Assembly: GCA_037379345.1 (NCBI GenBank)
Contig: CM074511.1
Span: 8,308,001 to 8,372,000 of the forward strand
Direction: 5' to 3'
Source of the DNA: Perna viridis
Lineage: Eukaryota
Length of the DNA stretch: 64,000 nt
Under the pieces are notes generated by a model, which saw only the letters and a program-made list of their open reading frames with translations, was not told the DNA's origin and ran no database searches. The translations under genes were made by a program, and so were the position numbers. Positions 24,360 to 54,800 of this stretch are shown one piece after another (within the stretch, counting starts at the first letter, position 1; every line of letters starts with the position of its first letter).

Positions 24360-27040
24360 AAGCTAAGCATCAACTAGCCAATTTACACTCTTCACGTTGA
24401 CGTACTCCCAAACAGAGTGGGGAAACGCTCTCGGACCCATGGGTCTGGGAGTAGGCCAGAGCGTCAACAGAGCAGCCCAGCCGCTAGTAGGACATACTTT
24501 GGCTGAGTCTCGTAAACGCAGATTTAAGAGAAAATCCAACTTGAAACAAATTTCCACTAAGGCAATGGTCAACCTCTCATTTTTTTCTCTATCTGAAACT
24601 GAAACCAGGGTTTTATCTAAAGGTTTGAATTTCTGTCCTACTCCTAACAATATAGATGAAGTTCAACTTGAAGATGACCTAGACAAATTTGCTAGATCCC
24701 TCAGGCTCAAGGAACATTTTGCTAACAAACATGAAGACCAGGATATGGACCCTGACAGTTCTGACTCCGACCATGAAGATCTATACACTCGAAAATTCAA
24801 AAAGAAAAATGAGCTCCTAAACCGAATAAATGTGGCACGCTAGAAAATGTTATTGACAAAATAAAATCAGATGTCAAATACTTATCCAACAACTACATTC
24901 CATCTTTCTTCAATATCACTCCCGATGAGAAAAAAAGCAATACAGTCGTTGAAAAACTTTGACGATATAGTTATAAAACAAGCAGACAAAGACAGTGCCA
25001 TAGTAGTCATGGATAAAAATAACTACATCTCCGAAGCAATGCATCAACTTTCGGATGAAAGATTTCATAAAAGGCTACTCAGCGACCCTACTAAATCTTT
25101 CAGTGAAAAAATTACTTCAGAATTGATCAAAATGTACAAGGACGGCAGCATTACTGAAGAACAGTTAGAATACCTAAAACCAGAGGATCCAAGACCCGGA
25201 CGTTTTTACCTTCTGCCTAAAATTCACAAAAAAAGATGTCCCTAGACGGCCCATAGTTTCTGCTAATAGTCACCCAACCGAAAAAAATTCTGAATTTGTT
25301 GATTACCATCTCCGACCCCTTGTCCAAAAGCTCCCGTCATATTTAAGACACCACGGACTATCTGATGAAAATGGAATCAATGAATCCTTTACCTCCCAAA
25401 ACACTTCTGGTGTCCCTTGATGTCACTTCACTCTATACTAATATCCCACACGATGACGGTATAGAAGCCTGGCATTCATGAGATATTTTGGACCCCCCTA
25501 CTGACTGCCTAGTAAATTTACTCACTTTAGTTTTGAAGTGTAACAACTTCATTTTCAACAACGAACGCTACCTCCAAATCAATGGTACAGCTATGGGAAC
25601 GAAATTGGCGCCTTCGTATGCTAACATCTTCATGGGTAAATTAGAAAATCGAATCATTTTTCAACATCTTTATCGAAACCCCTCTCTTGGTTTCGATTCA
25701 TCGATGATGTTGACATGAAATGGAATGAGACTAAACAAAATTGAGACAAATTTATCACATATGCCAACAATGTTCATCCATCAATCAAATTCACCCATGA
25801 AATTTCTGACACTAAATTCACATATTTGGATACTACTACGTTTGTAAGAGACGGTGAAATGTTAATGGATATTCACAGCAAACCAACTGATAGTCACCAA
25901 TATTTATCTCCCAATAGTTGTCATCCAAAACATTGTACTAAAAGCATTCCATGCAGCCAGGCACTTCGAATTCGGCGCATTTGCTCATCTGACGATACCA
26001 CCAACAAAAGTCTAGATGAACTCCGTGGTCATTTGTTATTATCGCGTGGCTATAAATCAACAGATATAGATCGGAGATTTGAACGTGCTAACAACATCAG
26101 ACGTAAAGATCTCCTCGAGTACAAACCCAAGAAAAAGAACAAAAGGGTTCCTTTTGTGCTTACATACCATCCAGCCTTTGGGAAACTCTCGCAGCTACTG
26201 CATTCACATTGGGAAGACTTTCAAAAACATCCTAAGCTCTCCAAGCTCTTTCCTGGGGCCCCGGTCCTGGCATTCCGTAGACCTAGGAGCCTAAGAGATG
26301 CCCTAGTAAGAGCAGATATTTCATCTTAGCCCAAACAAAATACAGCGGACGAGTGTCGACCATGTGGAGATAAAAGATGTAAGACATGTACCCAGATACT
26401 GCACACCAAAACGTTTAAAAGCTACTGCACTGGAAAGGAATTTGCCATTTTTTTGCGACGTGACTTGCAAAACCGAAAATACCATATACCTTCTCCAGTG
26501 CCGATGTGGTATGCAGTACGTTGGCGAAACAGAACAACCTATCAACAGGCGTATCAATGGTCATCGCAGTGACTACAAATGCAAACCAGACCTCCCTCTA
26601 AGTCGCCGGACACACCCAGGAGGACCTCACAACATTGTTGTTACGATCATAGAACATAATAAATACTGGTCAGAATGTAAAAGAGTGTCTCGGGAAAGCT
26701 TTTGGATGAAAAAAAAATACAAACATCTTCTCCAGATGGAAGAAACGAGAGAAAAATAATCCATTTTTAGGTCTTGGTCTAAGGGTGGTACTAAATGCTA
26801 TACATCAACACGCCGTACTACTATATTTTGACTTTTCTTAATTGTTTTCAAAAGTTCAAGACCCCCTTTGTTATTTTCATTCAGGTTCCTTATCATTTGC
26901 TTAAGTGTGCCTTTGATAAAAGTACAATCACCAACAGTGTGCGTGATTCAGCGTCTGAATCTGTTTTGATCTTGAACTTTATGAGTTTTATGCTGAAGAC
27001 GGATATCAGTTATCCGAAATATTCAATGTAAATTTACCAT
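24360..27040 (+). mobile_element. Penelope-like retroelement, Neptune-type (RT plus C-terminal GIY-YIG), frameshifted
   Basis: [83 protein letters not shown], a Cys-rich linker, and TCKTENTIYLLQCRCGMQYVGETEQPINRRINGHRSD; several frameshifts. Confidence 0.93.
26984..27033 (+). ncRNA. Degenerate minimal type-I hammerhead ribozyme in the Penelope 3' UTR/pLTR
   Basis: CTGAAGA-c-GGATA(tcagt)TATCC-GAAA-TATT core; stem I only partly paired. Confidence 0.6.
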
Positions 27041-36866: not shown

Positions 36867-38087
36867 CACAAGAGCTTCAGGAAAACTTAAAAGCTACTGG
36901 TCAATAAGGTTACAAATGAGGTTAGGGTTTGAAAGAATTAGAATTAATATAACAAGAATAATATGAAAACAGTTGTCAGCTGCCAGGTGGATGCACAAGG
37001 AAAAAGGAAAAAGAGAGCGAACGTCGAGGAGAAAGAGAACACCTTGGTTTTCAACCACGGACTGAAGCAACCACAACCAAAAAAAGACATTGGAAAGGAC
37101 TTGATCCGATCCTACAGAAGAGACTGAAATAACTCAATTCTAATGGATGGAATAATGTGGTTCACGGTATCAACAGCCTTTTGAAAGCACTTCACGCAGA
37201 GATTCGTTTACTACAGTGTCTTATATTATCTCCAGTTGGAAGGGCTATATATTATTGTAGAAATTAGAAATTGTGACAATGTGTCATATGTTTTATAGCC
37301 TTGAAATCCTCAATCTTTAGGTCCTGCGATACCCTTTTGTATTTGAAAATTTTTGATGCATTTGGTGAAGTATTTTGAATATGAAACGATATCATATGTA
37401 TTACAAGCCCAAGGTTAGATATTGGTCCAACAGCCTTTTGATAGAGTTCCAATATCAACCAAGTGCTAATAACGCATATGATATTTTAAAAAGACATGTA
37501 ATGGTCTTTTTATCATAGGCTTCACAATAGGATTGTAAAATAAAGGCTATTTATATATTTGACAACAAAACATCTATGTTCAACAATTTAATAAAACATT
37601 TTGTACAACAAAACAATTACTTCCGGTAATTTCATAGCAGTTACGTACTACGTAAAAAGGTGCGATATCATTTACCGACAACCGTGTAATATCATTCCTT
37701 AACAATTAATATTTTGATATCAACCCGCTTATGCAATCTTGGAAAATAGCAAATTTTGCCCTCTTATTTGCTTTATCATACAGTAAGAAATAATAATTAT
37801 TTATTCTAAGTATATGATAATATAAAATATCCTTACACGATCAAATAGATGACGCTTCAGCTGACCTGAAAATCCTTATCTATGAGACCCCTTAAGTTCA
37901 AACAAAATGCTTGGAAACCAGTAATTAGTGCAAAAACAAAGACAAAAACAATTCATATGACAGGCATACGGACACCTAAGAAAGTTATGCATGTAAATTG
38001 AAAATATTTTCTACGTGCATATATTCATGTGCCTTGATTTATCGTATTCGATCTATTCATTTTCCACCAACACAATACTTAAGCACT

Positions 38088-38539
38088 TTAGTAGGGTTTT
38101 TTCCTTGGACGACCACGTTTCCTATTGTACCTAGGCCATTCCCCCTGTCTCCTTTCTATACATTTGATATAGTGGTGTTCGTCGCATCTTGGACGCATGA
38201 TTACAACCCACGACACAGTAATATGCTCTAATTTCTCGTCCTGTCCCATATCTTTCAGGTAACTACCGACATCTTGTGCGTCGTATCCCGCCAGGTGGCT
38301 CAGCAATCTCTCTCGAATGCAGTCTTGTGATTGGCCAACGTAAATGACGATCCCTCGTTCCTGGATAGTAAAAATCCCTTTGGTTTCCGGGTCTGGTAAT
38401 TTATTTACAGGATATGACTGGTCAATTAGTGATTGACATTTATATTCTTTGCAGCCTCTTTTTGGCTGAAATTGAGATGAAATTTAGTCATGGAAGGAAA
38501 TTAAAAACCATTTTCTTAAACATACCAACCTTTTAGCAT
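38088..38539 (-). CDS. Small stand-alone GIY-YIG nuclease with C-terminal AT-hook (spliced; 5' exon uncertain)
   Basis: The frame is open from 38465 to the stop at 38088: ...LPDPETKGIFTIQERGIVIYVGQSQDCIRERLLSHLAGYD...ITVSWVVIMRPRCDEHHYIKCIERRQGEWPRYNRKRGRPRKKPY*. It shows the GI(F)-x9-YVG, R-x-R-L-x-x-H, catalytic E and YN pattern, then RKRGRPRK. One model is join(38530-38539, 38088-38392) = 104 aa. AATAAA at 37800-37805. Confidence 0.75.
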
Positions 38540-39019
38540 GTCTTATTTAAGTACCACTTTAGATAAAAATCGTACAAAAATGTTATAGTCATCAGAAATT
38601 AACATGTGGCTTTTCATATAACTTCTGCTCTTATGAGATGACAATAAATAGAATGTACTGTTGAGTTCATAATTAAGGGAGATAACTCTATAAATGACAC
38701 TAAAATACAATAGAAACTGTTGGATTTTCAATGTGGAATATCTCCTTAGAGCGGACAGATACATTTCATCATAAAGACCTATAAGGCAATTTAATAACAA
38801 ACGTAATCAGAAACTGAAGTCTTTTAAGTCGCTAATCGTCAAATAATTTATGCCACTGATTTTGGCTTGATTTCCATCCGAAATGTCACGAATACGATAT
38901 CTTCCAAAATCGGGTGACTTCCGCAAGAATCTTGGTTCCCTTGTTATGATTACTCTTTCGTCACCGTGATGACCCGAATGGTTCTCAATCAAAACAACTG
39001 GTTTCCAGGAAGTGCGGGT

Positions 39020-39790
39020 AATGTATTTTACTGTCACAGTAATGTTACAGTACTGTTATTTACGGTAATGTTACAGTATTGTTATTTACTGTACTATTTC
39101 ATTACTAAATTTTAAAGTGCTTTTCCATTACTGTCATTTACAGTAATGTTACAGTATTGTTACTTACAGTACTATTTCATTACTGAATTTTAAAGTACTT
39201 TTCCATTACTGTCATTTACAGTAATATTACAGTATTGTTACTTACAGTACTATTTCATTACTGAATTTTAAAGTATTTTTATGAGCAACTCGGCGGATGT
39301 TTCTAGAAAAGCAGAGGACGCTTACCCTACCGGTGCACCTGGTCCATGCTCCCAGTTTTTAGTGGAGTCCGAGTTGCTCATTTGCTTTTGTTACTTTGTA
39401 TGTATGATTTTAGTTACTTTATGTTCTTTGTTGTGTATGTCTGTTTTCCATGTCTGGTCTTTGTCCCAGGATTAAATTCTTTTGATTACCGCTATAACCT
39501 TGGTTCCCTTGATTACTCTTCCATTACTGTCATTTACAGTACTGTTCCATCACTAAATTGTACAGTACTGTTCCATTACTGAATTTTACAGTATTGTTCC
39601 ATTACAGAATTTTACGATACTGTCCCTTTACTGAATTTTACAGTACTGTTTCATTACTGAATTTCACAGTACTGTTCTATTACTGAATTTTACAGTACTG
39701 ATCCATTACTGAATTTTACAGTACATTTTCAGTACTGTGTGTGTAACAGTATCATTTCAGTAAGTTAAATTTTAAGTACAAGTACGGTAA
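39020..39790. repeat. ACAGTACTG-based satellite array (22-bp and about 67-bp periodicities)
   Basis: Repeated cattactgaattttacagtactgtt units. Confidence 0.88.
39279..39520 (+). mobile_element. Naiad 3' UTR/pLTR fragment inserted into a satellite
   Basis: Near-identical to the reverse complement of 40793-40945 over their shared part; interrupts a satellite unit at a T-run. Confidence 0.8.
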
Positions 39791-40792
39791 TACATTTCAC
39801 TAAGTATGCACTGTGTATTTATCAGACCTAAAAAACTGACAAAGTATATTTGAAGATGCATAGACATTTTGATATATACATATTTGACTTTGTTATTTTT
39901 AAAATGTGACGTCACAATGTTTTAACGTCATCAACTCCTTGACGTAAACCATGCAAAGAGCATGTCCTGGAGTTCTGGAAAGAAAATAGAAATATTTTTT
40001 TGTGAAATTGGACCCTACTGATATTATAAGATATCCGTTGATATCTATATGCCAAAAAAATATATGTTGTACACACGGTCCAAGAATTAAAAGATAACTG
40101 CAGAAGGGATGTGTACGTTCTTCAGTCACTTTTCTTATAGACAAAAGTACTTCGTTTGGTGTTTTACTAATAACATGATTACAGGAGTACCCACTTTGCA
40201 TATAGGGGATCAATAGACATGCCTTCTTACTATCATCCTATTTCAGTTTGTTCTTTGTACAATGTCCAAAGTTTTTGAGGGACATGTTTGTTCGTATACC
40301 TATGCATACATAAGTATTTAAATGATAAAAACCGAATACAGGGAGATCAGTCTGATTTAAGACAAGTCCATTCATATTGAACAAGTTGCTGGTAATTGAT
40401 GAATGGTTCAAATATATAAATAATATTTCAGCAACTGAAGGTTTTTGATCTCGGAACCTTTGGCTGAAGTGAGCAAAACAGGGGTTACCAACCCGCAGAA
40501 CATCCTCAGTATTTGGAGATTATCCAACTATACGAATATCATAGCGTTTTATAACGTAGAAACGGCTTGTCAAGCTTTCCTATAGATGATGTTGGAATGT
40601 GATGTCGGCCCTAGATTTCATGATTTTGTTGTCAATGAGATGCTTACACTCCAATAAAGAATTTGCCCCTCTCCCCTCCAAAAAAAAAATAATAATAAAC
40701 GTGTTCCTTTTTCACATTCAGTGGTCGTTTTTTACGTTACATTTCATTTTCAAGTTTGGTGCTTTTATGAGTAATTAACAGTTGGTTGTCCA

Positions 40793-41394
40793 GAACTAAA
40801 CATAAAGTAACTAAAATCATACATACAAAGTAACAAAAACAAATGAGCAACTCGGACTCCACTAAAACTGGGAGCATGGACCAGGTGCACCGGTAGGGTA
40901 AGCGTCCTCTGCTTTTCTAGAAACATCCGCCGAGTTGCTCATAATAAGTCAAGGCCGGGGTAGACAAACGAGGAAAAGAAAACTATGACCCGTTGAAGAA
41001 ATCAGTTTTCATGGTGCTGGTGGATACACCATAACGATCCACGAGTTCATGGTGACGACCATAAAACTTCTGTAGTGATTACTTCAATCTTGTAGCAACA
41101 TAACCCTGTTCCAGAAGCCTATTTGTTAGAGTTCTAGCGCGATACAAAAAGTCTGCGTAGTTTCGGCAAGCTCTGGCATAACGTATGACTTGTGATATGA
41201 ACATTCCATACGCAGGTGCAGGGATGTTGCCACAGATGAAAGGAAAGTTGACAATTCTGAATGAAAAGTCATCACGTTTGTCGTAAAGTTTGGTCAATAG
41301 TTTTCCTTTACCATTGATTTCTAGGTGTAGGTCAAGATATGAGGCTGACTTCACAGTGTCTGCAGTATCCTTTATCTCAGGTTCTTTTGGGTAG
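40793..41394 (-). mobile_element. Naiad-type Penelope-like RT C-terminus plus 3' UTR
   Basis: SASYLDLHLEI..KLYDKRDDFSFRIVNFPFICGNIPAPAYG.FISQVIRYARAC, with no C-terminal endonuclease; followed by the gagcaactcggcggatg... repeat. Confidence 0.85.
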
Positions 41395-41404
41395 ACCAGA
41401 TGTT

Positions 41405-41735
41405 CCTAGTAAACATTACTGTAATTATACTGAAAAAAAATGTAGTACTGAAACTATACTGAAAACTTACTGAAACATACAGTACTGAAAATATACTGTT
41501 TAACACAGTAATTAAAATGCTTTTTGTAAAAGACGGTACTGAAAACGTACTGTAAACTTCAGTAAAGAAACAGTACTGTAAATGAAAATAATGGAATAGT
41601 ACTGTAAAATCCAGTGATGAAACTGTACTATAAATGACAGTACTGTAACATTACTGTAAAAGACAGTACTGTAACGTCACTGTAAAAGACAGTACTGTTT
41701 CAGTAGTCATTACTACAGTACAGTTTCAGTACAAA
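41405..41735. repeat. Inverted copy of the ACAGTACTG satellite
   Basis: Its reverse complement is collinear with 39020-39790. Confidence 0.8.
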
Positions 41736-44700
41736 ATAGAAATGTGTTAGTTTAACGTTGGTAAATTATTGGTAGTGTATATATAGATCGGGTCCTGATA
41801 ATGTTTATAGCCTATATAGTCAATTGCAACGAGCCCGTGTCTGAATCGAGAGACTGAGTTCAGTGCTAACCGATCTTTTTATCTTTTAATGTAAACTTCC
41901 CGTTCTCATACAAGCAAAAATCACATGTTGAACACGTGTATGATATTTAAGAGGTACACTTTGATCTCATGTGAAGCTAGAATTGATGGTTTGGTTTTAC
42001 CGCACCAATCAGCAGCATAATGTGGTGTGGCAATATTATGCAAATCATATGCGAATGTAAAGTATTGATATTACGAATTACGAGTGCAAGCAGTCACTAA
42101 CAATATTAGGGACTTAAAAATGTATAGCCTTTTTTTTATTAGTGTATCGCATATTATAGAATTTGCATGATTCTTACAAAGACTGCTACTTAATATTCCT
42201 GAATTTAAAGGTCAAAACGACTGGCGTTCAGTTATTGAATACAAATGTAACCCATTTTTATGTTCAAGAATTCACGATATTCTTGAAAACTCGAATTTTA
42301 TGCAGTTTATAATTTGTGATTCCTTTTAATTTCAAGTTACTGTTGTGAAATACTTTGACAGATTGGCAATCTCTACTTATCAAGTCTATAAACAAAGACT
42401 TGTGATACTATCATTCCATTGTTTTACTGTCCCGCTTTGTGAGAGGCGTACAGTGACCATAGTGTTCATCTGTCCGCCTGTTCTTCCTTCGTCTGCACAT
42501 GTCCAAAAAAGAGAAGGGACGATAAAGGCTCTAATATGCCTAACTAATCATAAACTGTTGAAATATGAAGACTTGAATCCATATAACAAATGAGAAAACA
42601 TAAAGACTTCCGACATCTTATATGCATTATGAGATATCCTATGAAATTTAAAAGATAGCTAATAAAATGTATAAAATATCTCGTATGTTTTTTAAGATAT
42701 TTATAGCATACTTCTGTCAAAATATTAAGTGGCTGACTGTTATGTGTAGTTTCAGACAAAGAAATAACGAACAAAGGTGTATGAACATTCGGTTATCAAT
42801 ATTGCCCAAAAATATCAGCTCCCTTGTAGTTACATAAACGTATGTGAGACTGCAAAGAATTGTTAATTCTTTGGTGTTTTTTTTTTCGAGCATATTTACA
42901 CTAAGAAACTGACAACTATAACCATACCCAAGATACAACTGAATATTTTCACATATGATAAAATATGTAATTATGAATGTATTCACTAAATATGAACTTG
43001 TTTTTTGGGTGTAGACACCATTTTCTTGTATAATGCGCAGATTATAAAATCGTAAGATTCAATTTTGACTGAAGAGACAGCAACTACAATTTATACTTGA
43101 CCATATGTCACTGGGTTGGGGAGCGAGTTCAATTTTCCGTGTTGTATAAAGCTCATTTGAAATGTACGACACGAAGTGTCGATAGAGTCAACATATAAAG
43201 CCGGAAGGTGATCAACGATTCAAGGCCTTGGCTGAAAATATGTCTTCACGTTCGGTCATAGTCAAAGGTACAACAATTGTGTCGTGTCCATTTTGTTTGA
43301 AGTTATTCTGTATGTATTTAAGTTTGTTTATTCCCATGCCAACTAAACTAAATTTTTCGCCATTTTATGTCAGTTAACTATAACTGCAAGAATTAGACCA
43401 ACAACTAAATCAAACACCAGAGTTATCACGTAATTATATTGAACAATGAAAATACAAGTATTTTGTTTCTGCATGGTTCTGCATTTGACGGACAAGGTTC
43501 GGTGCTTTGTGATATCCGCTGTGAATTACAACCGGACGGACCCAACACAGTGAATTAAAAAACCGGAACTAATATTGACACCCACCTTGAAAATACATTT
43601 GCCGTGAACGTGGTCTACTATTTGTACCAGACTGAGATACATGCTTAAAAGTAGTATGAATGTTGATATCATTGACTTAATAGTAGATTTATAATTTGAT
43701 TACTTTAAGATGATTATATATACATTTATAATAACAATAATGTTTCTTTTTCGTAAACAAATTATTATTATGACCTTCGACATGTTGAATGCTGGAAATA
43801 AAGCATAACTGCGGAAGATAAAATTTGAGTAACAGACTGTTTAATTGTTTGTAGAGTTGTATAATTTCTTATTTTTATTTAAAGTTTCGTTTAAGAGTGT
43901 TGTTGGATAATTGTCGTCGTATTTGTGAAAATGTTTAGATGGTACCGATGACATACGCAAGTCCAATACAAAATGCCCTTGTACTCACCTCCATGGGGTA
44001 GGGCCCGCAAAAATCACCCCTTAACACAAGAGGTGAGGTGTGCGCGCTCATGGAAACCTACTCACAACACCCGGGTCCTAAACCAGAAGTGTACCCGAAA
44101 GGAATACAATTGTAGTAATTTTTGTACTTGTTTCCCTTCAAATTTACGAGCATACACCAACTATAGACTATTATAGTAACTACTGAGCTAGGAGTGTATC
44201 CGTAACCACGCACTTACTATTATAATGAGCTGAATGACAGAAAGAAAATATGAAAAACGCGTAAAAGAAACAGAATAAAAAAGATAACACTCTAAACGAT
44301 GAAAAGTCATAAACCTTTGTTATTTAGTTCATTTTTATAATTTGCAACTTTATTAACCAATGGCAGATACCGTTCCTATCGTTAGAAGAAACTACTACGG
44401 ACTGGGGATCGATGTCTAACCAACGTTTCAAAGTATCTTTTCAATAAAATAGGGCAAAATTTTTCATAAAACTTAAGTAATTAAGGTTTTTCTTATAAAC
44501 GTACTAAAATAATTCTACAAAATTTTGGCGACCAAAAGGTCGCGTTTTAAGTGTATTGTAAGAAGACAAGGTTTCAAAGTTATGAAAATTAGCGTTCTAC
44601 ATGCACCGCCTTTATAATTGGAATGCATACCATGTTTCGAAACTCAATTTCATATCCGATATCAAATCCAAATCACTCAGAAACCACAAACTGTTTACCT

Positions 44701-46508
44701 CCTGAGATGATTTATTTTTAGGTGGAAATTCCCAACAGTTTTGTTCTTACATTTTATTTGGGGAATCACCTTTCTCTATATATAAAATGTTAAATCTACA
44801 TTTTACAACTTAACAAAATGTCTTACTGGAAAGCAAGCTTGGCATTCTGCATACATCATTTCACCTGAACAATTTAAAATTGAGATGGAAAATGGCCATA
44901 CAATATGGCGGTAATTATAAGTTTTTATACTCCTTTAGTTTCGGGATTTCCCTTATTTGAATTGTGACATTTAAGGTATTTGTTTGTATTGTACAAATCG
45001 AATTACTAAATATGTTGCCATAGCGTGTCTGGCATACATATTAGACAAATTCAATCCAATCAAGTCTGTGGCAACAAAAATGGGTCACATTCGAATCATA
45101 GAAATCAAAGTTTCAAGAAAATTTGAAAATAATAAATTTTTATCACAAATGTTAATAACACTACATTAAGAATTCGCATGTATATTAATTAAACTGTATT
45201 ATTTTCGATGGCAGTCGAGTCACTAAGGATTTTCCTTGTTATCATAAGTAGTGGTTCATATCAGAATTGCGATGGTTTCACCTAAATTTTGTTTTTTATC
45301 TATAAGCATCTAGATATATTGATTAAACGTATGTAGATAAAAGCTTTCCTTAAAATTATTTAAATACTTTAAATTTCGATCTAGTGACAAGACTAAAATA
45401 AGTATCTTGATGACGATACCATTACAATTTTTGATATGAATCGCCTCGGCTAATATATAGTGTCACAAAGCATCTTCATGCTTCTTGTGTATTTTCATCT
45501 AGATGCTTATGAATTGAAATTATTAAGATGATTTCATAGCATACATATATTTTAACTTTATCTAGATGTAAAACCCGTGCAGATGAAACCGTATAAATTC
45601 TATAGAAATCGCAACCCCTAAAAACCGGACTGTTTGATTCGTACAAGAATCTGCACTAGAGTTTTCAGTGGAGTAGGTAATACGAACAGTATATAGTCTT
45701 CCTTGTTTCTCCGGTGTATTATATGTGCATCCCAATATTGTAATATAACACTCCATCAAGTTGTGGGCAACACATAAAAGCGCCGAAGTCCATCAGTCGT
45801 TATTTCTACATTTTATACCCAAACTGGTATTCAAGACAGTATGCACATCTCAGTGTGGTTATAATACATCCCAGTTTCATTACAATGTTGAAAGCTGCAT
45901 AGAAAAGTTGTGGACGGGCAGACAGACAGGATGAAACCTATATAAACCCCCAAACTTCGTTTGTGAGATAAAATAGAAGATCTTAAGACCAATTAGTGCT
46001 TGCCTACATATATAGTCTTATACTTTATGGTAAGTTGACCGATGAACTTTTGAAAAATGATTACGATACAATTCACTTTCCTTATTCCTAAATTTGTAAT
46101 ATATACAGGTACAACACTGCTGATAATTATTTGGTCAATACAGGAATTATTTATAATCAGTCACTTCATCCCACATTCGTTGATAACGATGAGTAAAAAT
46201 TTTCTCCTTGATTTTTTTCAGAAATCGAACACCTTGCTAGCTTCCTTGTTTGATAATGGGTCACCTGGGTCAAATATTAAGTATTACGTATTTTAATGTT
46301 TTCCATTACAAGGATCTACTTCAATTCTCAACGAAAGTGACAAGATCCCTTCGAAAAAAATCATTTTATTTCTGTACAGTAACTACCTGACAGCAACCTT
46401 TTTCAGTTTCAATTCATATGTTAGAGCAGTACGGTACTTATATTTTAAGTATTTTGTGAAGAATGGCAAACATAAAGAAAAATGAACAAAGTGTGTATAT
46501 ATAGTGTA

Positions 46509-48869: not shown

Positions 48870-51800
48870 CTGTAAATAGATGATAAATATTGATTTTTTG
48901 TTAAAAGTTCAAATGGCTTTACATTATTATCTAACTTCAAACTACTTAAAAAAAAAAAAAAAACCAGTTATCAATGAAATGGAAGATTTGAATGAAAACT
49001 TTGTAAGTCTTCAGTTTCGCTGTTACAAGTCAGCTATGGAAAATTCATATATTTAAGTATTTCTCCATCTAAGAATCAGGCAAAATGTGTAAAAGGGTGG
49101 TACATGGAGGAAAAAAAACACTGAGATTTTATTGCATTAACCAACCATCCAAGTGTATATAAATTTGCCTTTATAAGATATTGATAGGTCAAGTCTAGTT
49201 GAAATGCACTATGGACAAATGGTGGTAAAATTTTCCTGCACTTTTTCCTTACGCAAGAAGTAAAAAAAAATCTGTCATAAATACTTAAGAATAAATTTAA
49301 ATAACTTTTTTAGTTGTTCTCTAGATCTATTGAATACATTTGAGGAAATAAAGACCAAATTGAGAAATATGATATGCCACCCATTGCCTGATTCTTACAC
49401 AGAATGGTACTTAAATTAATACTTATTAATTATAATAAAGTGTAGAATAAAAACTATGTGAGTTGAAGCATTTTCTTCAATATAACAAATAAGCAATCAT
49501 CAGTTGGAAAAATGCACGCATGAATTCATAAATAATTGTGTTGTAAAGATTTGATGTACAAAAACTAATTCATTAAGTAAATTAAAAGCAAAAAAAAATA
49601 TCTTCAGACTGATTAAAATAGGCAATGACAACAAAACATACATTTGCATGCAAAAGAAGTATTCAGGTGCAGGTAATTTCACAAAGCAGTAAACTCCTGT
49701 AAGAGGAATAGGTGAACAGGTTTTCAAAGGTGGTGAAGAAGTAAGCAATAAATACTTGTCATTTGTCAGCAATATTGAAGGAATTTATATTAAAATGTTC
49801 AGAAAAAGAAAATGGTTTCATTCAAAGAAAAGGAAAGCACCTGATTATATTTCAAAATAGTTAATAAACAATAAGTACCAGGAAAGCAAAAATATAAACA
49901 AAAAGGTACACACTTAAAATTAGTCAAATTAGTAATTTATAAATAGTAACATACTTACATTTGTTACAACAGGCTTGGGGGAAACTTTCATATTTTTCTG
50001 AACACCATTACTTTTAAAATTGAAGGTATCGCTGGTATTTTTATCAAAAGCAGCGAAAGGATCATCTTTACTATCTAAATGTTCACTTTTCTGTCCTTTT
50101 AATTGACTAGAGAATGCTGATGCAAAAGGATCACCAAAACTGTTGTCAAATGCTTTAGAAAATCCATTTGATGAATTGAATGGATCACAGTCTGCAAATG
50201 GATCACTGTTCTGAAATGGGTCCTCAATTACAAATTGCCCACTTGAACATGAGGATGTTGAAGAGTTCATACTCACTTTATCTTCAGCAGCAGTTGACAA
50301 ATTATTATTTTCTTCCACTTTTTTACGAGTATTGTCATTTGAGTTACTATGACTAGAAGCAGCATGAGATTCTTTTAATGTTGCATCACCTTGACCTTTG
50401 CTTTGAGGTCGGGGTCTTGGAACAGGTTTTATGCTTGTTGATTGAGATTCTGGTGGTAAATTCCTTGGTGGCAGTGATGGAGCAAGTTTATCACAGGAGT
50501 TTTGCAGGTGGGGTGCAGAAAGTGCAGGGCGCGGTGGGGGAGCAGGTGGAATAGCTGCAATTTTGTCCACTTTCCTTTCTGGTGGCAATGGTGGTGGTGG
50601 ACCTTCTGGTGAAGGCATATCAAAATTGTCACTGTCACTCCCTTCACTTCTTTCTGGTGACATTGGCCAAGCATTAGCTTTTTCAGAAAATGAACCCCAA
50701 TCATTTGGTTTTTTTGGGGAAGACCATGGATCTGGTTTTGACGATGACACTGGCCATTTATCACCACTTGTGGTAGAGTTTTTAAATGCCATTGTTTGTG
50801 ACTGCATAGCTTTTGAAGGATTGTTTACATAGGAAGTATCAAAAGGATCATTACTAGCAGGAGTTGTTTTGAAGTTACCAGCTTCAGGAAGGTTGAAGGA
50901 ATCAAATGTGCCAAAGGGATCTTCAAAACTTGCCTGTTGAGTTGGTTGAGTGGCTTTTACCAACTCACTCATTGGTTTTTTAGGTGAAGTATTTTTCTCA
51001 GCAAACAGCTGTTTTGGTGTTTTGTCGGTACTTTTTGTTCCAAGTTCACACAGGTCTCCAAAAGCATCGGCAGGAGGTTTTGGTGAGTCTCTTCCTCCTC
51101 CCTGTGTGGTTAATTTGACTGGTGCCAATACAGATTCACCAAAGGGATCACTGTTACTGCTTGTCTGGGGGGTAGAGGTCTGCATTCCAAAAGGATTTGC
51201 AGCTGTTGATGCTGGGGCTCCAAAGGGTGCTGATCCAAAACCACCTCCCTAAAAAGAGATAAAAACCATTTAATTTTACTTACATTAAAGGCAAATATAG
51301 TATATCTGTAAGTGCGATTGTTTATTCATGATAAAAAAAGATGTAGACATGTGAGTCTTTGTCTAGATTTACCTATACTGTTTGCACAGTTCACAAATGG
51401 ATGTAACTGTAAATGAGGAGTTGATGGTACTAATCAATCACAATGCATGGCCATTAAAACTTATAAGTAATTTACTAATACTTGTGTGTTTTTGCTACAT
51501 GAGTACATATCAGATAGGGATGTCTATTATTTCTGTTTCACTTTTCTAGTTGACATGACACGATGGATAGTTTTACCATAGGATTCTGTCCAAATGGTGC
51601 TTGCTGCCCTGGCATGGGCTGTCCTCCAAAAGGATTAGCAACTGGAGCAGCACCAAACCCTGGCTGGGGCTGTCCAAATCCTGGCTGAGGAGCTGGTTGT
51701 CCAAAACCTGCCTGGGGAATTCCTCCTGGTGGTACAGGCTGTCCAAAACCAGCCTGCGGAACTCCACCATGTGGTCCAGGCTGTCCAAACCCAGGCTGAG

Positions 51801-54800
51801 CTCCAAATCCAGGCTGAGCCCCAAAACCAGCATGGAGCATTCCAGGATTCTGAGCAGGCATTGTGGGTGTGTTACCAAATAGACCTAAAATAGCATTTTT
51901 ATCAACCGGTGAAGCTGGTTTAGTGCCAAACAAGTCCATATCCTGAAGGTCTGATGAAGCTGATGTAGTGGGTGCTTCAGGGGCAGGAGTAGCAGAGCCT
52001 CCCCAGGGATCATTTGACGGTGGTGTAGTTTGTTCAGCCTCAAAGAAGGTTTCGAGTTTATTCATTTGTTCAATACCCTACAATGAAAGCAAAGCAAAAG
52101 CTAATGGTAAATTCATATTGAATGATTTGTGTGGCTCGAAAGGTAAAGACAATAACAATCTTACACTGCTAACATTGGTGTATTTATCACAAATCAATTT
52201 TACCAGTGAGAAAAAAAATTGAACACCATTGCAAGACAGAATCAAGACACTAAAGGGTAAGATTTCAAACGCTCTGTGGAGTACATTAGTACAGAAATTC
52301 AGAATGTCATCTTTGCTGAAAAAGATGTCATAAAACATTTTATTGTGATATAACAAAAGTCCCATGGTTATTTTACCCATGAGTAAGATAAGGAAATCTC
52401 ACATAGCCTTAAATATGAAAAAAAAACAGAACAGTCAGTATTTTCTAAAGCCACCTGCTATGAAAAGAGTCCAAGCTGTAGTTCTTTCCATAGACAAAAT
52501 CAATATCACGAACACAATAACTATGTTAAAAGACGATTTACTAAAATTTCAGGTACAAATGAATATCAAAGCTTGGATCATCTAAGTACACCACTTCTTT
52601 GCACATAAGAACACGTCATTTATGGCAACTTACAAAGTGTCCACCTTTAGACCGTTGTCTGTTTTGCTTCTGTTATCCCTTAGGCGGAAGTTTCCATCAA
52701 ACTTCAGGAAACATAATAACGTAATTTAGTGAAGGTTAACGTTAGGAAAGATAGAATCACAACATCACCTATGAACTTATGAAGCATTTAAATTTTAACC
52801 TGTCTCATATTGTGTATATACATGTATTATTACAAATGTATATCTATTTTTTGGTTATTACACGTGTGATTTCCATGTAATCAAATAATCAAATGTATGT
52901 AAAACATTACATTACATGTATGGAGTTCCTAATGCCTTTTTTAATTGTTGTATATAATATTTTTATGAAGTAAATTTACTTTTTATTAATAAACATAATT
53001 CTGATTGAACTATAAATCAGTGATATGGAATCCATCTCTGTTGTGGCAATTAATCCATATATACAATTGATTAAGGTCATCTACACAAATGCCAAAATCA
53101 AAAGCCCAGATTGAAAGGCAAAAAAGTTACAGCCTGGACAAGATTTGTCACTGAAAAAACAAAATTTGACCTTGAAGTCTAAGTTCAAGGTCATAGGCCA
53201 CTACCCATGGTATGAAACACACAGTCTTTAGGTGGTTTACTCACATGACAAATATCAAAAGCCCACATCAAAAGACAAAAAAGTTACAGCCCGGACACAA
53301 GTTTGTCACTGAAAAACAGAAAATTTGACCTCCAAGTTAAAGTTCAAGGTCATAGGCCACTATCCATGGCATGGGATACATTGTCTTTAGGTGATCTACC
53401 AACATGCAAAATATCAAAAGCCTACTTTAAAGGCAAAAAAAAAAAAATAAAGCTCAAACACTTGTTTGCCATTGAAGAACAGGAATTTGACCTTCAGGTC
53501 AAAGTGCAAGGTCATAGGCCACCATCCATGGTACGTGACATATTGTCTTTATGTGATCTGCCCACATATTTGGTTTAAAAAGGTGTGTTTTAATTAAAAA
53601 AACAGACTTCTCATCAATGAAGGAAATATAAGTATAAATTATTTGATATATCTTATGAAGCACTCCATTTGATTTCTGGATAACAAACTAACCTGACCAA
53701 TTGTTTCCAGTTCACTTTCTAAATCAACCAAAGAACTTCCTTGGTCTTTCACTGGTTTGTTATTCTGAGGAACCTGAAGTAAAAGAAAATGTAGTTACAA
53801 TTGTAGACAAAATATCATATCTTGTGAACAAAGCACACTTATAGTCAGTTGAAAATAAAAACAAACCATGTACTGCTTTGCATCTTTTCAGATATAATTT
53901 TACATTTAAACCATAATTAGATGAGAAAGTAAGTATTTTTTTTTTTAAAGTCAAATTCATATAAGTCAAGTAATAAAAAGAATAAAAGTTTACAAATATA
54001 TCATCATAACACCACAATTGAAGTTACACGAAACAGACTACTTATCATTTTAAATTCTCAAATGTATTAAATAGCTAGAATACTGTCAGGTTCAGGTATA
54101 AAACAAAAAAAAGCTGTGAGCAAGTAAACTTTTTTCATGGGGTTTAATCATATGAAATCCTTTGGTTAGGTTATCTCTCCTTTTCTTGCAGGTATCTACT
54201 AATTCCTTCATGTACAGCAACATATGATGCCCAAACATTCAATAAAATTTTATCAAAATTCAAACTATGATGTAAGATTGTCTCCCTTTGGAGGCTTCAG
54301 ACAGTATATTTATTTATATATATAATTATTATATATATTATATATCTATATGTATGGACAGATGAACAAATAGATGGTAGGATGGTCAAACAGACTGACA
54401 GATTGCTTTCTTTATATCTCACTAAGTTTGTGGGGCTATAATAAGGGTACCAATTGTGCTTAGAAATAGTGAAGAAAACAAAAAAAATCTTAAATCGTAT
54501 AATAACAGAACATTGTGACTGCAATCAAAACATAATTGTGTATTACTAAATATTAGACTAAATCAACAACATGAATAGTAACAACAACTAAATCCCAACA
54601 ACATTAAAACTCACATCATAGATGGGTTCAGAAATCTCATCATACCCATTGTAAAGGTAAAGTTCCTATAGGTTAAGTTTACAATAGTTATTATTATAAT
54701 GAAATATTCCTTTTAACAAATCAAAGCAAGAGTAAACACAGGAAATTATCATTTTCACTCTGTTATGTTTTCTTCTTTGTATCTGCTATTAATTTTACTT

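What the first reader, a model, noticed from the sequence alone, without database searches (positions are those of the whole stretch)
38088..38539. Hidden stand-alone GIY-YIG nuclease fused to an AT-hook
Seen in sequence: the 72-aa ORF in the track extends upstream without stops to 38465. This reveals KGIFTIQERGIVIYVGQSQDCIRERLLSH...PRCDEHHYI...WPRYN followed directly by RKRGRPRKK. Established: GIY-x(9-11)-YIG plus conserved Arg, Glu and Asn define the GIY-YIG fold, and KRGRPRK is a canonical AT-hook. The well-known animal GIY-YIG proteins are SLX1, ANKLE1 and Penelope endonucleases. This one lacks the Penelope CCHH/TC..C pattern seen at 26460-26580 and has no linked RT. Inference: it is a compact (about 105-130 aa), intact, spliced host gene for a nuclease tethered to AT-rich DNA. 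It could act in defence against foreign or satellite DNA or in repair, and may be of prokaryotic or mobile origin. The first motif Tyr is Phe, so catalysis may be altered.
Basis: partly seen in the sequence, partly recalled or inferred. Interest (0 to 1): 0.85.

Follow-up and report, generated by a model that had tools for sequence, protein, structure and literature searches.

The report
Small mussel GIY-YIG protein with AT-hook
This is a real, expressed two-exon gene of a bivalve that encodes a 126-residue protein made of one UvrC-type GIY-YIG nuclease fold and one AT-hook. The tyrosine that normally starts DNA cleavage is replaced by phenylalanine, so the protein probably binds DNA more than it cuts it.

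Summary
On the minus strand a stop-free frame runs 38483..38091 and carries GIF-x9-IYVG, Arg, His, Glu, Asn and RKRGRPRKK.

RNA contigs and strand-specific reads show a transcribed last exon (37581-38465). It is spliced at the predicted acceptor, and an upstream exon supplies only the ATG, giving 126 aa.

The AlphaFold model is confident (pLDDT 86). Its seven best PDB matches are all GIY-YIG folds, and the family profile hits UvrC (E 6e-6).

It is not a transposon fragment. The genome has 8 places, 5 of them intact, with a conserved intron position. dN/dS is about 0.1-0.16. hhalign found no specific link to the window's Penelope-like endonuclease (probability 12.8%).

Relatives are small uncharacterised proteins of mussels, ark clam, oyster, abalone and a coral.

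In every sequence I could score, the AT-hook and the Tyr-to-Phe change at the GIY general base occur together. The same change abolishes cleavage in ANKLE1, which still binds DNA, and in CMoRE.

The best reading is a DNA-binding, catalytically weakened or rewired GIY-YIG protein.

A promoter block with a perfect kappaB-type site is conserved with Mytilus trossulus, which hints at immune regulation. Function is untested.

The parts
38088..38465 (-). Coding part of exon 2: 125 codons (PKRGC...KKPY) plus the stop at 38090-38088
   Evidence: Translation. RNA contigs end exactly at 38465/38466. The acceptor tttcag| lies at the same phase-0 position in 4 paralogs and in M. trossulus.
38118..38384 (-). 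GIY-YIG domain (residues about 28-116 of exon 2): G30-I31-F32, Y42-V43-G44, R53, H57, E96, N114
   Evidence: AF2 model pLDDT 86.4 with strand-strand-helix...strand-helix order. Foldseek top hits are UvrC GIY-YIG. VIA-align top 7 are all GIY-YIG folds, Z 8.6-4.0. Profile against PDB finds UvrC at E 6e-6.
38370..38372 (-). Codon TTT = Phe32, in the column of the GIY tyrosine (UvrC Y19)
   Evidence: Alignment columns. HMM alignment to 1ycz. All hook-bearing relatives in which the first motif could be scored have F, and relatives without the hook have Y.
38097..38123 (-). AT-hook RKRGRPRKK (R115-K123) in a low-confidence C-terminal tail
   Evidence: RGRP is invariant in the 5 paralogs and present in 11 of the 12 nearest database relatives, P0001-P0012; the twelfth, P0009, is a fragment that ends before this region. 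pLDDT is 52 for the last block. Pfam AT_hook E 0.0034 in one member.
37581..38087 (-). 3' UTR (transcribed; AATAAA at 37805-37800)
   Evidence: X1 contig covers 37581-38465 and X13 contig covers 37629-38466. Stranded raw reads have depth 2.5-5 only with the first mate on +. Sequence.
38466..41311 (-). Intron of the transcript form seen in run X1 (GT..AG on the minus strand, 2846 nt, filled with repeats)
   Evidence: Joint 38465->41312, ends CT..AC on the + strand, one contig of depth 29 with 43 letters on the far side.
41312..41354 (-). Repeat-derived first exon (3' end); its last codon ATG (41314-41312) is the start codon, preceded by an in-frame TAG and followed by GTAAAG
   Evidence: Joint; sequence. 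The piece belongs to a repeat with more than 2000 candidate copies at 94-95% identity.
44631..44700 (-). Candidate ancestral first exon ending ...AAC ATG|GTATGC (ATG 44633-44631). Inferred, not covered by the reads laid.
   Evidence: It is the only ATG|GTRNG in 11.5 kb upstream. It mirrors M. trossulus AAA ATG|GTATGC. The region is single-copy in the genome.
44709..44734 (-). Conserved promoter block TGGGAATTTCCAC..AAAAATAAATC: a kappaB-type decamer (44724-44733) plus a TATA-like run, about 100 nt upstream of the candidate ATG
   Evidence: 24 of 26 bases identical to M. trossulus at the equivalent place, blastn E 1e-5, while 4-fold sites are randomised. Pattern scan.
44943..44952 (.). Second, palindromic kappaB-type decamer GGGAAATCCC, 219 nt further upstream
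   Evidence: Only 4 distinct sites occur in 64 kb, and two of them are here.

Best explanation
A genuine, low-copy, expressed host gene of a bivalve. Exon 1 contributes only the ATG. Exon 2 (38465-38088, minus strand) encodes a stand-alone UvrC-type GIY-YIG domain followed directly by one AT-hook, 126 aa in all.

It belongs to a hook-bearing group whose only named members are Mytilus. That group sits within a family of roughly 120-150-aa GIY-YIG proteins found in molluscs and at least one coral.

In this group the GIY general-base tyrosine is Phe. The YIG Tyr, Arg, His, the metal-binding Glu and Asn are kept, and the ancestral C-terminal 'RG(N/D)xC' has become 'KRGRPKK'.

Most likely mechanism (inferred): the nuclease fold still docks on the DNA backbone through its Arg, Tyr, His, Glu and Asn pocket, the AT-hook anchors it in an AT-rich minor groove, and hydrolysis is absent or greatly slowed. 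That makes it a DNA-binding pseudo-nuclease or a very slow nickase rather than an efficient endonuclease.

Shown here: gene structure, transcription, fold, family, selection, and the link between Phe and the hook. Inferred: DNA binding, loss of activity and the biological role.
For: Transcription and splicing:
- 14 transcriptome-sized runs hold 0.64-0.68 of the 1301-nt probe, which equals the exon-2 share.
- Stranded reads lie on one strand only, and a GT..AG joint sits at 38465.

Fold and family:
- pLDDT 86.4, pTM 0.81.
- UvrC, EndoII, I-TevI, Eco29kI, PD-T4-3, Hpy188I and the GRXS16 N-terminal domain are the top structural hits. Z falls from 4.0 at rank 7 to 3.0 at rank 8.
- Profile against PDB finds UvrC at E 6e-6.
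- 24 of 42 relatives hit Pfam GIY-YIG and 26 of 42 hit NCBIfam UvrC.
- The ESM Atlas neighbours are GIY-YIG clusters.

Host gene:
- 8 genomic places, 5 intact, with a conserved phase-0 intron.
- dN/dS is 0.155 for L003 against L005. Window against M. trossulus gives dN 0.18-0.20 with dS saturated at about 1.7.

Impaired catalysis:
- F32 aligns with UvrC Y19.
- The GIY Tyr is the general base (PMC3045582).
- ANKLE1 Y453F is more than 50,000-fold down yet binds DNA at nanomolar affinity (PMC10287932).
- GIY Tyr-to-Phe abolished CMoRE nuclease activity in vitro (PMC12923530).
- Eco29kI Y49F, a tyrosine-to-phenylalanine variant, is deposited as an 'inactive variant'; I did not align it to F32.
- Wherever both features could be scored, F and RGRP co-occur.
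Against: - No biochemical data exist for any member.
- Strict conservation of E96, N114, R53, H57 and Y42 across paralogs with saturated dS is what one expects of a working active site.
- The hook group also gained an invariant His-His right after the metal Glu (E-H-H-Y), which could supply a replacement base.
- One AT-hook alone binds weakly, and RKRGRPRKK could simply be a nuclear localisation signal.
- The Phe-hook link may be one event on one branch. The tree does not resolve it, so it is not independent evidence.
- Expression is low, at depth 2.5-5.
Confidence: 0.55

Rival explanations
1. An active minimal endonuclease or nickase tethered by the AT-hook. The active site is rewired so that His57 or the clade-specific His97/His98 replaces the missing tyrosine hydroxyl. 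It cuts foreign, satellite or damaged AT-rich DNA.
For: All other catalytic residues are invariant under purifying selection. The E-H-H-Y motif is found in the Phe/hook group only. GIY-YIG domains normally need a small accessory DNA binder (PMC1564403). In beta-beta-alpha-Me nucleases a His sits at the spatially equivalent general-base position (PMC3045582).
Against: Tyr-to-Phe at this position gave no detectable cleavage in ANKLE1 and CMoRE, whereas His-to-Ala in ANKLE1 cost only 150-fold (PMC10287932, PMC12923530). I could not measure whether H97 or H98 reaches the active site, because no model coordinates were available.
Confidence: 0.3
2. A selfish or mobile gene: a free-standing homing-type GIY-YIG, or cargo of a transposon or virus that spreads among marine invertebrates, rather than a domesticated host gene.
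For: Patchy distribution across mussels, ark clam, oyster, abalone and a coral, with lineage-specific near-identical copies in Haliotis and Oculina. Members also hit group I intron endonuclease and phage endonuclease models. The locus is surrounded by repeats, with a Penelope-like element 11 kb away.
Against: Only 8 places in 723 Mb, diverged 41-63%. The spliceosomal intron position and the ATG|GT first-exon design are shared with M. trossulus and are plausible in two paralogs. The promoter block is conserved with M. trossulus and the promoter is single-copy. There are no repeats bounding the gene and no relatives in viral contigs.
Confidence: 0.08
3. A decaying or non-translated transcript: an expressed pseudogene, or repeat-driven read-through without protein function.
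For: Low read depth. One observed first exon is repeat-derived. An out-of-frame upstream ATG lies in the candidate ancestral first exon.
Against: The 125-codon frame is intact. dN/dS is far below 1 against orthologue and paralogs, with motif residues invariant. The model folds confidently. No coding variant was seen in 4 runs.
Confidence: 0.04

Closest known systems
N-terminal GIY-YIG domain of bacterial UvrC/Cho (PDB 1YCZ, 1YD6)
   Same: It is the best sequence-profile hit (E 6e-6) and among the best fold hits. It has the same motif order, GxY...YxGK/Q...R...Y/H...E...PxxN, including the C-terminal Asn typical of the UvrC lineage (PMC1564403). One abalone relative is even auto-named 'uvrABC system protein C-like'.
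   Different: There are no UvrB-binding, EndoV-like or HhH domains; the whole protein is 126 aa. It is eukaryotic and spliced. Phe replaces Y19. An AT-hook tail follows. The 2006 census lists no eukaryotic UvrC-like members (PMC1564403).
ANKLE1/LEM-3 and SLX1 (animal GIY-YIG nucleases)
   Same: They are animal host genes with a GIY-YIG catalytic fold and the same catalytic residue set (PMC10287932).
   Different: There are no ankyrin/LEM or RING domains. SLX1 is only a weak structural match (Z 2.2). No ANKLE1- or SLX1-specific Pfam model was hit. The natural Phe equals the ANKLE1 Y453F dead mutant.
Penelope-like element endonuclease (example at 26364-26759 of this window)
   Same: GIY-YIG superfamily, and abundant in the same genome.
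   Different: The PLE EN has Cys-rich insertions and is fused to an RT. hhalign of the family against the window's PLE EN gives probability 12.8% over 33 columns, which is only the generic motif. This gene is low-copy and has its own intron.
I-TevI-type homing endonucleases and T4 EndoII
   Same: A small GIY-YIG catalytic domain that relies on a minimal appended DNA-binding element (PMC1564403). Fold matches are Z 6.9 and 7.5.
   Different: There are no NUMOD or zinc-finger/HTH DNA-binding modules. It is not in an intron or intein or a phage genome. The general-base Tyr is lost.
HMGA-type AT-hook
   Same: Core R-G-R-P flanked by Lys/Arg on both sides, in a disordered tail.
   Different: A single copy is fused to a nuclease fold. 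It evolved from a pre-existing 'N-x-(K/R)-R-G' end of the domain. The held literature has no paper describing a GIY-YIG plus AT-hook protein.

Membership tests
GIY-YIG nuclease superfamily | GIY-YIG fold: three-stranded sheet with flanking helices | tested here: met
   AF2 pLDDT 86.4. The top 7 of 48,161 PDB representatives are all GIY-YIG folds, Z 8.6-4.0, and rank 8 scores 3.0. Foldseek gives UvrC at probability 1.00.
GIY-YIG nuclease superfamily | 'GIY' and 'YIG' motifs 9-11 residues apart, both with Tyr | tested here: not met
   The sequence has G-I-F-x9-I-Y-V-G. The YIG Tyr (Y42) is present, but the GIY Tyr is Phe32 in this gene and in all its hook-bearing relatives in which the motif could be scored. 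More distant relatives have GIY. So it is a member by descent and fold, with one catalytic hallmark lost.
GIY-YIG nuclease superfamily | Conserved Arg, Tyr/His, metal-binding Glu and (UvrC lineage) Asn | tested here: met
   R53, H57, E96 and N114 are invariant or nearly so over 42 sequences. They align to UvrC R39 and Y43.
GIY-YIG nuclease superfamily | Significant match to Pfam PF01541 or PF20815 | tested here: inconclusive
   The protein itself scores below threshold: PF20815 15.8 bits against a cut-off of 22.4, and PF01541 13.1 against 22.6. 24 of 42 relatives match PF01541, best E 1.9e-8.
GIY-YIG nuclease superfamily | Metal-dependent DNA cleavage | not testable with these tools
   This needs recombinant protein. 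Published Tyr-to-Phe data predict a strong loss (PMC10287932, PMC12923530).
UvrC/Cho excinuclease | C-terminal C4, UvrB-binding, EndoV-like and HhH domains | tested here: not met
   The protein ends 11 residues after the Asn. Domain definitions are from PMC1564403.
Penelope-like element endonuclease | Cys-rich (CCHH-type) insertion and fusion or linkage to a PLE reverse transcriptase | tested here: not met
   There is no such insertion between the motifs. hhalign probability is 12.8% to the window's PLE EN. There are 8 genomic places only.
AT-hook | R-G-R-P core flanked by basic residues, outside a folded domain | tested here: met
   R-K-R-G-R-P-R-K-K lies at residues 115-123. RGRP is invariant in the paralogs. 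Tail pLDDT is 52. The Pfam AT_hook model is too short to be decisive (1 member, E 0.0034).
AT-hook | Minor-groove binding to AT-rich DNA | not testable with these tools
   This needs EMSA or footprinting with netropsin or distamycin competition.

The most novel reading that the evidence does not exclude
This is an immune-regulated DNA-targeting effector of mussels. A Rel/NF-kappaB-driven promoter switches on a minimal GIY-YIG/AT-hook protein. The promoter has a perfect GGGAATTTCC site plus a TATA-like box, conserved with M. trossulus, and a second kappaB-type site 219 nt upstream. The protein would bind, or with a His-rewired active site nick, AT-rich foreign DNA such as viral genomes. The Tyr-to-Phe change plus the His-His and AT-hook gains would then mark a functional shift in an invertebrate-specific branch of the UvrC lineage.
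Probability: 0.15. Interest if true: 0.75.

Novelty: new variant of a known kind. Interest (0 to 1): 0.5.

Why it matters
Animals were thought to have three kinds of GIY-YIG proteins: SLX1, ANKLE1 and Penelope-like element endonucleases. This gene belongs to a fourth kind, so far uncharacterised: tiny stand-alone UvrC-type domains in molluscs and corals that exist in databases only as 'uncharacterized protein'.

The mussel branch is a natural experiment. The general-base tyrosine was swapped for phenylalanine at about the same time as an AT-hook and a His-His pair were gained, and everything has since been kept under purifying selection.

If the protein is inactive, it is a clean case of a nuclease fold turned into a DNA binder. 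If it is active, it shows a new way to run GIY-YIG chemistry.

At 126 aa it is easy to express and test. The conserved kappaB-type promoter gives a direct hypothesis for when it is used.

Tried and rejected
- **High-copy transposon fragment: rejected.** A protein search and a profile search of the 723-Mb genome found 7 and 8 places.
- **Derivation from the neighbouring Penelope-like EN: rejected.** hhalign probability is 12.8%.
- **Close viral or prokaryotic donor: not found.** Pattern-based scans of IMG/VR and GTDB contigs gave no tblastn-confirmed relative. The first try with the wide alignment failed for lack of a conserved stretch. These scans only see close relatives, so this is a weak negative. 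The all-against-all profile search found only 61 proteins at E<=1e-3.
- **Pairwise dN/dS between most paralogs: not computable.** dS is saturated. Only L003/L005 (0.155) and LWL85 for window/M. trossulus (about 0.11) gave numbers.
- **Tree to show one origin of the Phe+hook group: poorly resolved.** The hook sequences fall in one 19-row part of the tree together with a few GIY sequences in a polytomy. One origin is neither shown nor excluded.
- **Pfam on the repeat fragment that supplies the observed first exon, and on the Penelope-like ORFs: no hit** at E<=0.01. The repeat remains unnamed.
- **Literature:** no paper in the held library links GIY-YIG with an AT-hook in one protein or describes this family. 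The Mytilus 'GIY-YIG DC' transcript of PMC6215123 cannot be tied to this gene.
- **Earlier scan notes:** nothing relevant.

Full report
**What is in the sequence**

- On the minus strand the frame is open from 38483 to 38091 (131 codons), with a stop at 38090-38088 and an upstream stop at 38486-38484.
- The 72-aa ORF in the mechanical list is only its tail.
- A polypyrimidine tract and tttcag precede CCA (Pro) at 38465, so 38465 is an exon start and 38466-38539 is intron.

All protein searches and the fold used exon 2 alone, by reference (window:38091-38465:- or window:38091-38483:-). The joined Met-plus-exon-2 protein was never typed or searched.

**It is a transcribed, spliced gene**

- A 1301-nt probe (37600-38900) is held by 20 public runs from 9 studies.
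- 14 transcriptome-sized runs hold 0.64-0.68 of its words. That equals the share of the probe lying in exon 2 (866 of 1301), whereas larger DNA-like runs hold 0.85-0.93 (the reading of the shares is my inference).
- Strand-specific raw RNA reads cover 37694-38481 at depth 2.5-5 (X21) and 0.03-1.5 (X22), only with the first mate on the + strand. In the usual stranded libraries, where the first mate reads the strand opposite to the RNA, that means a minus-strand RNA.
- A 928-nt contig (X1) covers 37581-38465 without a single difference and then jumps to 41312. The skipped 2846 nt end CT..AC on the + strand, which is GT..AG on the gene strand.
- The upstream side reads ...TAG AAA TCA ATG|GTAAAG, so the first exon gives only the start codon after an in-frame stop. 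The protein is Met plus 125 residues, 126 aa.
- A second contig (X13) covers 37629-38466 and has 76 further letters that did not lie on the 37300-43200 stretch.

**Two candidate first exons**

- The 41312 exon lies inside a repeat with more than 2000 candidate copies at 94-95% identity. It looks like a recent exonisation.
- The M. trossulus orthologue (LOC134708481, 134 aa, 70% identical) has exon 1 = ATG CAT CAT AAA ATG|GTATGC, a 731-nt phase-0 intron and the same acceptor.
- In the window, the only ATG|GTRNG in 11.5 kb upstream is AAC ATG|GTATGC at 44633-44631.
- About 100 nt upstream of it lies a block with 24 of 26 bases identical to the equivalent place in M. trossulus (blastn E 1e-5). 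This holds although 4-fold degenerate sites between the two genes are randomised, with 7 of 23 identical.
- The region is single-copy.
- I therefore infer an ancestral first exon at about 44700-44631 and a 6.2-kb intron bloated by nested repeats. This exon was outside the reads I laid, so it is unconfirmed.
- Either first exon gives the same protein.
- The candidate exon also holds an out-of-frame upstream ATG.

**Fold and family**

- Alone, the protein only grazes Pfam: PF20815 E 0.014 and PF01541 E 0.12, both under threshold.
- A profile of the five paralogs, scored against 1.84 billion representatives, found 61 proteins at E<=1e-3, mostly 110-170 aa.
- In a 42-sequence alignment the more distant members show a textbook GIY...YVG(R/K/H)S..R.RL..H...E..Y..C......P..N..RG pattern.
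- 24 of 42 hit Pfam GIY-YIG (best 1.9e-8) and 26 of 42 hit an NCBIfam UvrC model.
- The profile hits the UvrC GIY-YIG domain in the PDB (1ycz, E 6e-6), then T4 EndoII and I-TevI.
- AlphaFold2 with this alignment gives pLDDT 86.4 and pTM 0.81, with strand-strand-helix-helices-strand-helix and a low-confidence tail.
- Foldseek ranks UvrC GIY-YIG domains first, at probability 1.00.
- VIA-align against 48,161 representatives ranks seven GIY-YIG folds first: the GRXS16 N-terminal domain, EndoII, UvrC, I-TevI, Eco29kI, PD-T4-3 and Hpy188I, with Z 8.6 to 4.0. It then drops to Z 3.0.
- ESM Atlas neighbours are GIY-YIG clusters.
- The GIY-YIG fold is therefore established.

**Residue map** (exon-2 numbering, from the HMM alignment to 1ycz and the columns)

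| This protein | T. maritima UvrC |
|---|---|
| F32 | Y19 |
| Y42 | Y29 |
| R53 | R39 |
| H57 | Y43 |
| E96 | the metal-binding Glu (by column) |
| N114 | N88 (by column) |

**Host gene, not a transposon piece**

- The 723-Mb assembly has 8 places. Five are intact, dispersed along contig 1 at 8.3, 41.7, 43.9, 48.7 and 67.2 Mb.
- One broken copy sits in tandem with the 41.7-Mb copy. One copy on contig 11 is split into two matching pieces and carries a stop.
- The intact paralogs are 57-63% identical to the window protein. All have an acceptor at the same phase-0 position.
- Two of them have a plausible ATG|GT first exon about 700 nt upstream.
- L003 against L005 gives dN 0.042 and dS 0.274, omega 0.155. 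All other pairs have dN 0.2-0.36 with dS saturated. Window against M. trossulus gives dN 0.18-0.20 and dS about 1.7.
- The family shows only the generic motif in common with the window's Penelope-like endonuclease (hhalign probability 12.8%).

**Who has it**

- Named relatives are 'uncharacterized protein' in Mytilus trossulus and M. galloprovincialis.
- Others are 'GIY-YIG domain-containing protein' in the ark clam Tegillarca granosa, and proteins of the oyster Saccostrea and of Haliotis species, one auto-named 'uvrABC system protein C-like'.
- The coral Oculina patagonica also has relatives. Many more come from unnamed transcriptome or metagenome assemblies.
- Some Haliotis proteins embed the domain in longer proteins (331 and 892 aa) with no other Pfam domain.
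- No close relative was found in viral or prokaryotic contig collections by the pattern-limited scans.
- The 2006 census of the superfamily lists no eukaryotic member of the UvrC-like family (PMC1564403).
- I found no paper on this family.

**The key twist**

- Every sequence with the RGRP hook in which the first motif could be scored has G-(I/L)-F. This covers the five paralogs and P0001-P0007, P0010 and P0011.
- Sequences without the hook have G-I-Y, with two exceptions, G-I-H and G-V-F. They end ...N-x-(K/R)-x-G-(N/D)-x-C instead.
- The hook group also has an invariant E-H-H-Y (E-D-H-H-Y in P0006), where the others have E-G-x-Y or similar.
- The tree places the hook sequences together but does not resolve a clean clade. 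The co-occurrence may therefore be a single historical event.

Published evidence on this tyrosine:
- In human ANKLE1, Y453F has no detectable activity, more than 50,000-fold down, and is used as an inactive protein that still binds DNA at nanomolar affinity. H498A costs only 150-fold (PMC10287932).
- In the defence nuclease CMoRE (the chain listed as PD-T4-3), all the active-site mutants tested, Phe and Ala changes of the two conventional tyrosines included, lost in-vitro nuclease activity (PMC12923530).
- Eco29kI Y49F, a tyrosine-to-phenylalanine variant, is deposited as an 'inactive variant'; I did not align it to F32.

So the natural Phe32 predicts strongly impaired hydrolysis. Against that, Y42, R53, H57, E96 and N114 are invariant after saturation of silent sites. 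This suggests that the pocket is still used, either for binding the DNA backbone and a metal, or for chemistry with a substitute base such as H97 or H98. I could not inspect model coordinates to test the latter.

**Most likely mechanism**

- The AT-hook is a disordered basic tail with an R-G-R-P core. It evolved from the ancestral R-G end of the domain. It would anchor the protein in AT-rich minor grooves, while the GIY-YIG fold docks on the backbone.
- Cleavage is absent or very slow. I give 0.55 to this whole reading, most of its uncertainty lying in that last step, against 0.3 for an active, rewired nuclease.
- The tail could also serve as a nuclear localisation signal.
- Identity as a real GIY-YIG plus AT-hook gene is near certain. 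The activity state and the biological role are inference.

**A lead on regulation**

- The conserved upstream block is TGGGAATTTCCAC followed by AAAAATAAATC. It contains a decamer fitting the Rel/NF-kappaB consensus GGGRNWYYCC, which I recall from established knowledge, next to a TATA-like run.
- A second, palindromic site (GGGAAATCCC) lies 219 nt further upstream.
- The whole 64-kb window has only 4 distinct such sites, against 2.3 matches expected by chance on both strands. Two within 230 nt is unusual, though this was noted after the fact.
- Depth differs about five-fold between two samples of one study.
- This makes immune-inducible expression a testable idea, not a finding.

**Verdict**

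- It probably overstates the case in calling the protein a nuclease.
- Prokaryotic or mobile origin remains unproven.
- This is a new variant of a known kind: an uncharacterised invertebrate branch of the UvrC-type GIY-YIG lineage with a natural general-base substitution and an AT-hook.

Noticed in passing
window 40850-41403 (minus strand): A fragment of a very abundant repeat, with more than 2000 candidate copies at 94-95% identity and heavy RNA depth. It has an open frame (...LYDKRDDFSFRIVNFPF...) and no Pfam hit. Its internal AATGGTAAAG supplies both the start codon and the splice donor of the first exon seen in run X1.
   Followed up: partly
window 39270-39525 and 40850-40990: Two copies of a short element in opposite orientation, sharing the string MSNSADVSRKAEDAYPTGAPGPCSQF in translation. 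RNA depth is extreme, about 700-1200 on each strand in the raw reads. They are flanked by tandem 'cagtactgtaa'-type repeats at about 39040-39300, 39540-39760 and 41430-41760. This is probably a transcribed SINE- or MITE-like repeat.
   Followed up: no
window 38621-38957 and 41888-42193: Non-canonical 'joints' in several runs (38621->42142, 38689->42158, 38957->41888) suggest that these two pieces are halves of one older repeat, split by later nested insertions inside the gene's intron.
   Followed up: no
window 24397-26759 (+): A Penelope-like element in several broken frames, ending in a GIY-YIG endonuclease with Cys-rich insertions (…CDVTCKTENTIYLLQCRCGMQYVGET…). It is unrelated to the gene studied beyond the generic motif.
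   Followed up: partly
window 38091-38465 (-), residues C5, C10, C49, C102: Four cysteines are invariant in the five paralogs (G-C-x4-C near the N-terminus, D-C-(I/M)-R-E-R, and (K/S)-C-I). More distant relatives instead keep an N-terminal Cys, C-x-E, the Cys after the Glu helix and a C-terminal G-(N/D)-x-C. This may be a structural metal site or disulfides that were remodelled when the AT-hook replaced the C-terminal Cys.
   Followed up: no
window 49929-52065 (-): Long Pro/Ser-rich and Gly/Gln/Pro-rich open exons of a neighbouring gene on the same strand. Another first-stage note on this window, at 59590-59829, speaks of Dab. It lies upstream of the GIY-YIG gene's candidate promoter.
   Followed up: no
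G000:C1:41676183-41678105 (L004, L006/L013) and G000:C11:31306962-31308332 (L014, L015): One paralog has a tandem neighbour broken by a TGA. The contig-11 copy is split into two matching pieces about 1 kb apart and carries a stop, so it is a pseudogene or a copy with an extra intron.
   Followed up: no
P0022 (331 aa) and P0036 (892 aa), Haliotis: In abalone the same small GIY-YIG domain is embedded in longer proteins with no other recognisable Pfam domain. Several near-identical loci exist, which points to a lineage-specific expansion worth a look.
   Followed up: partly
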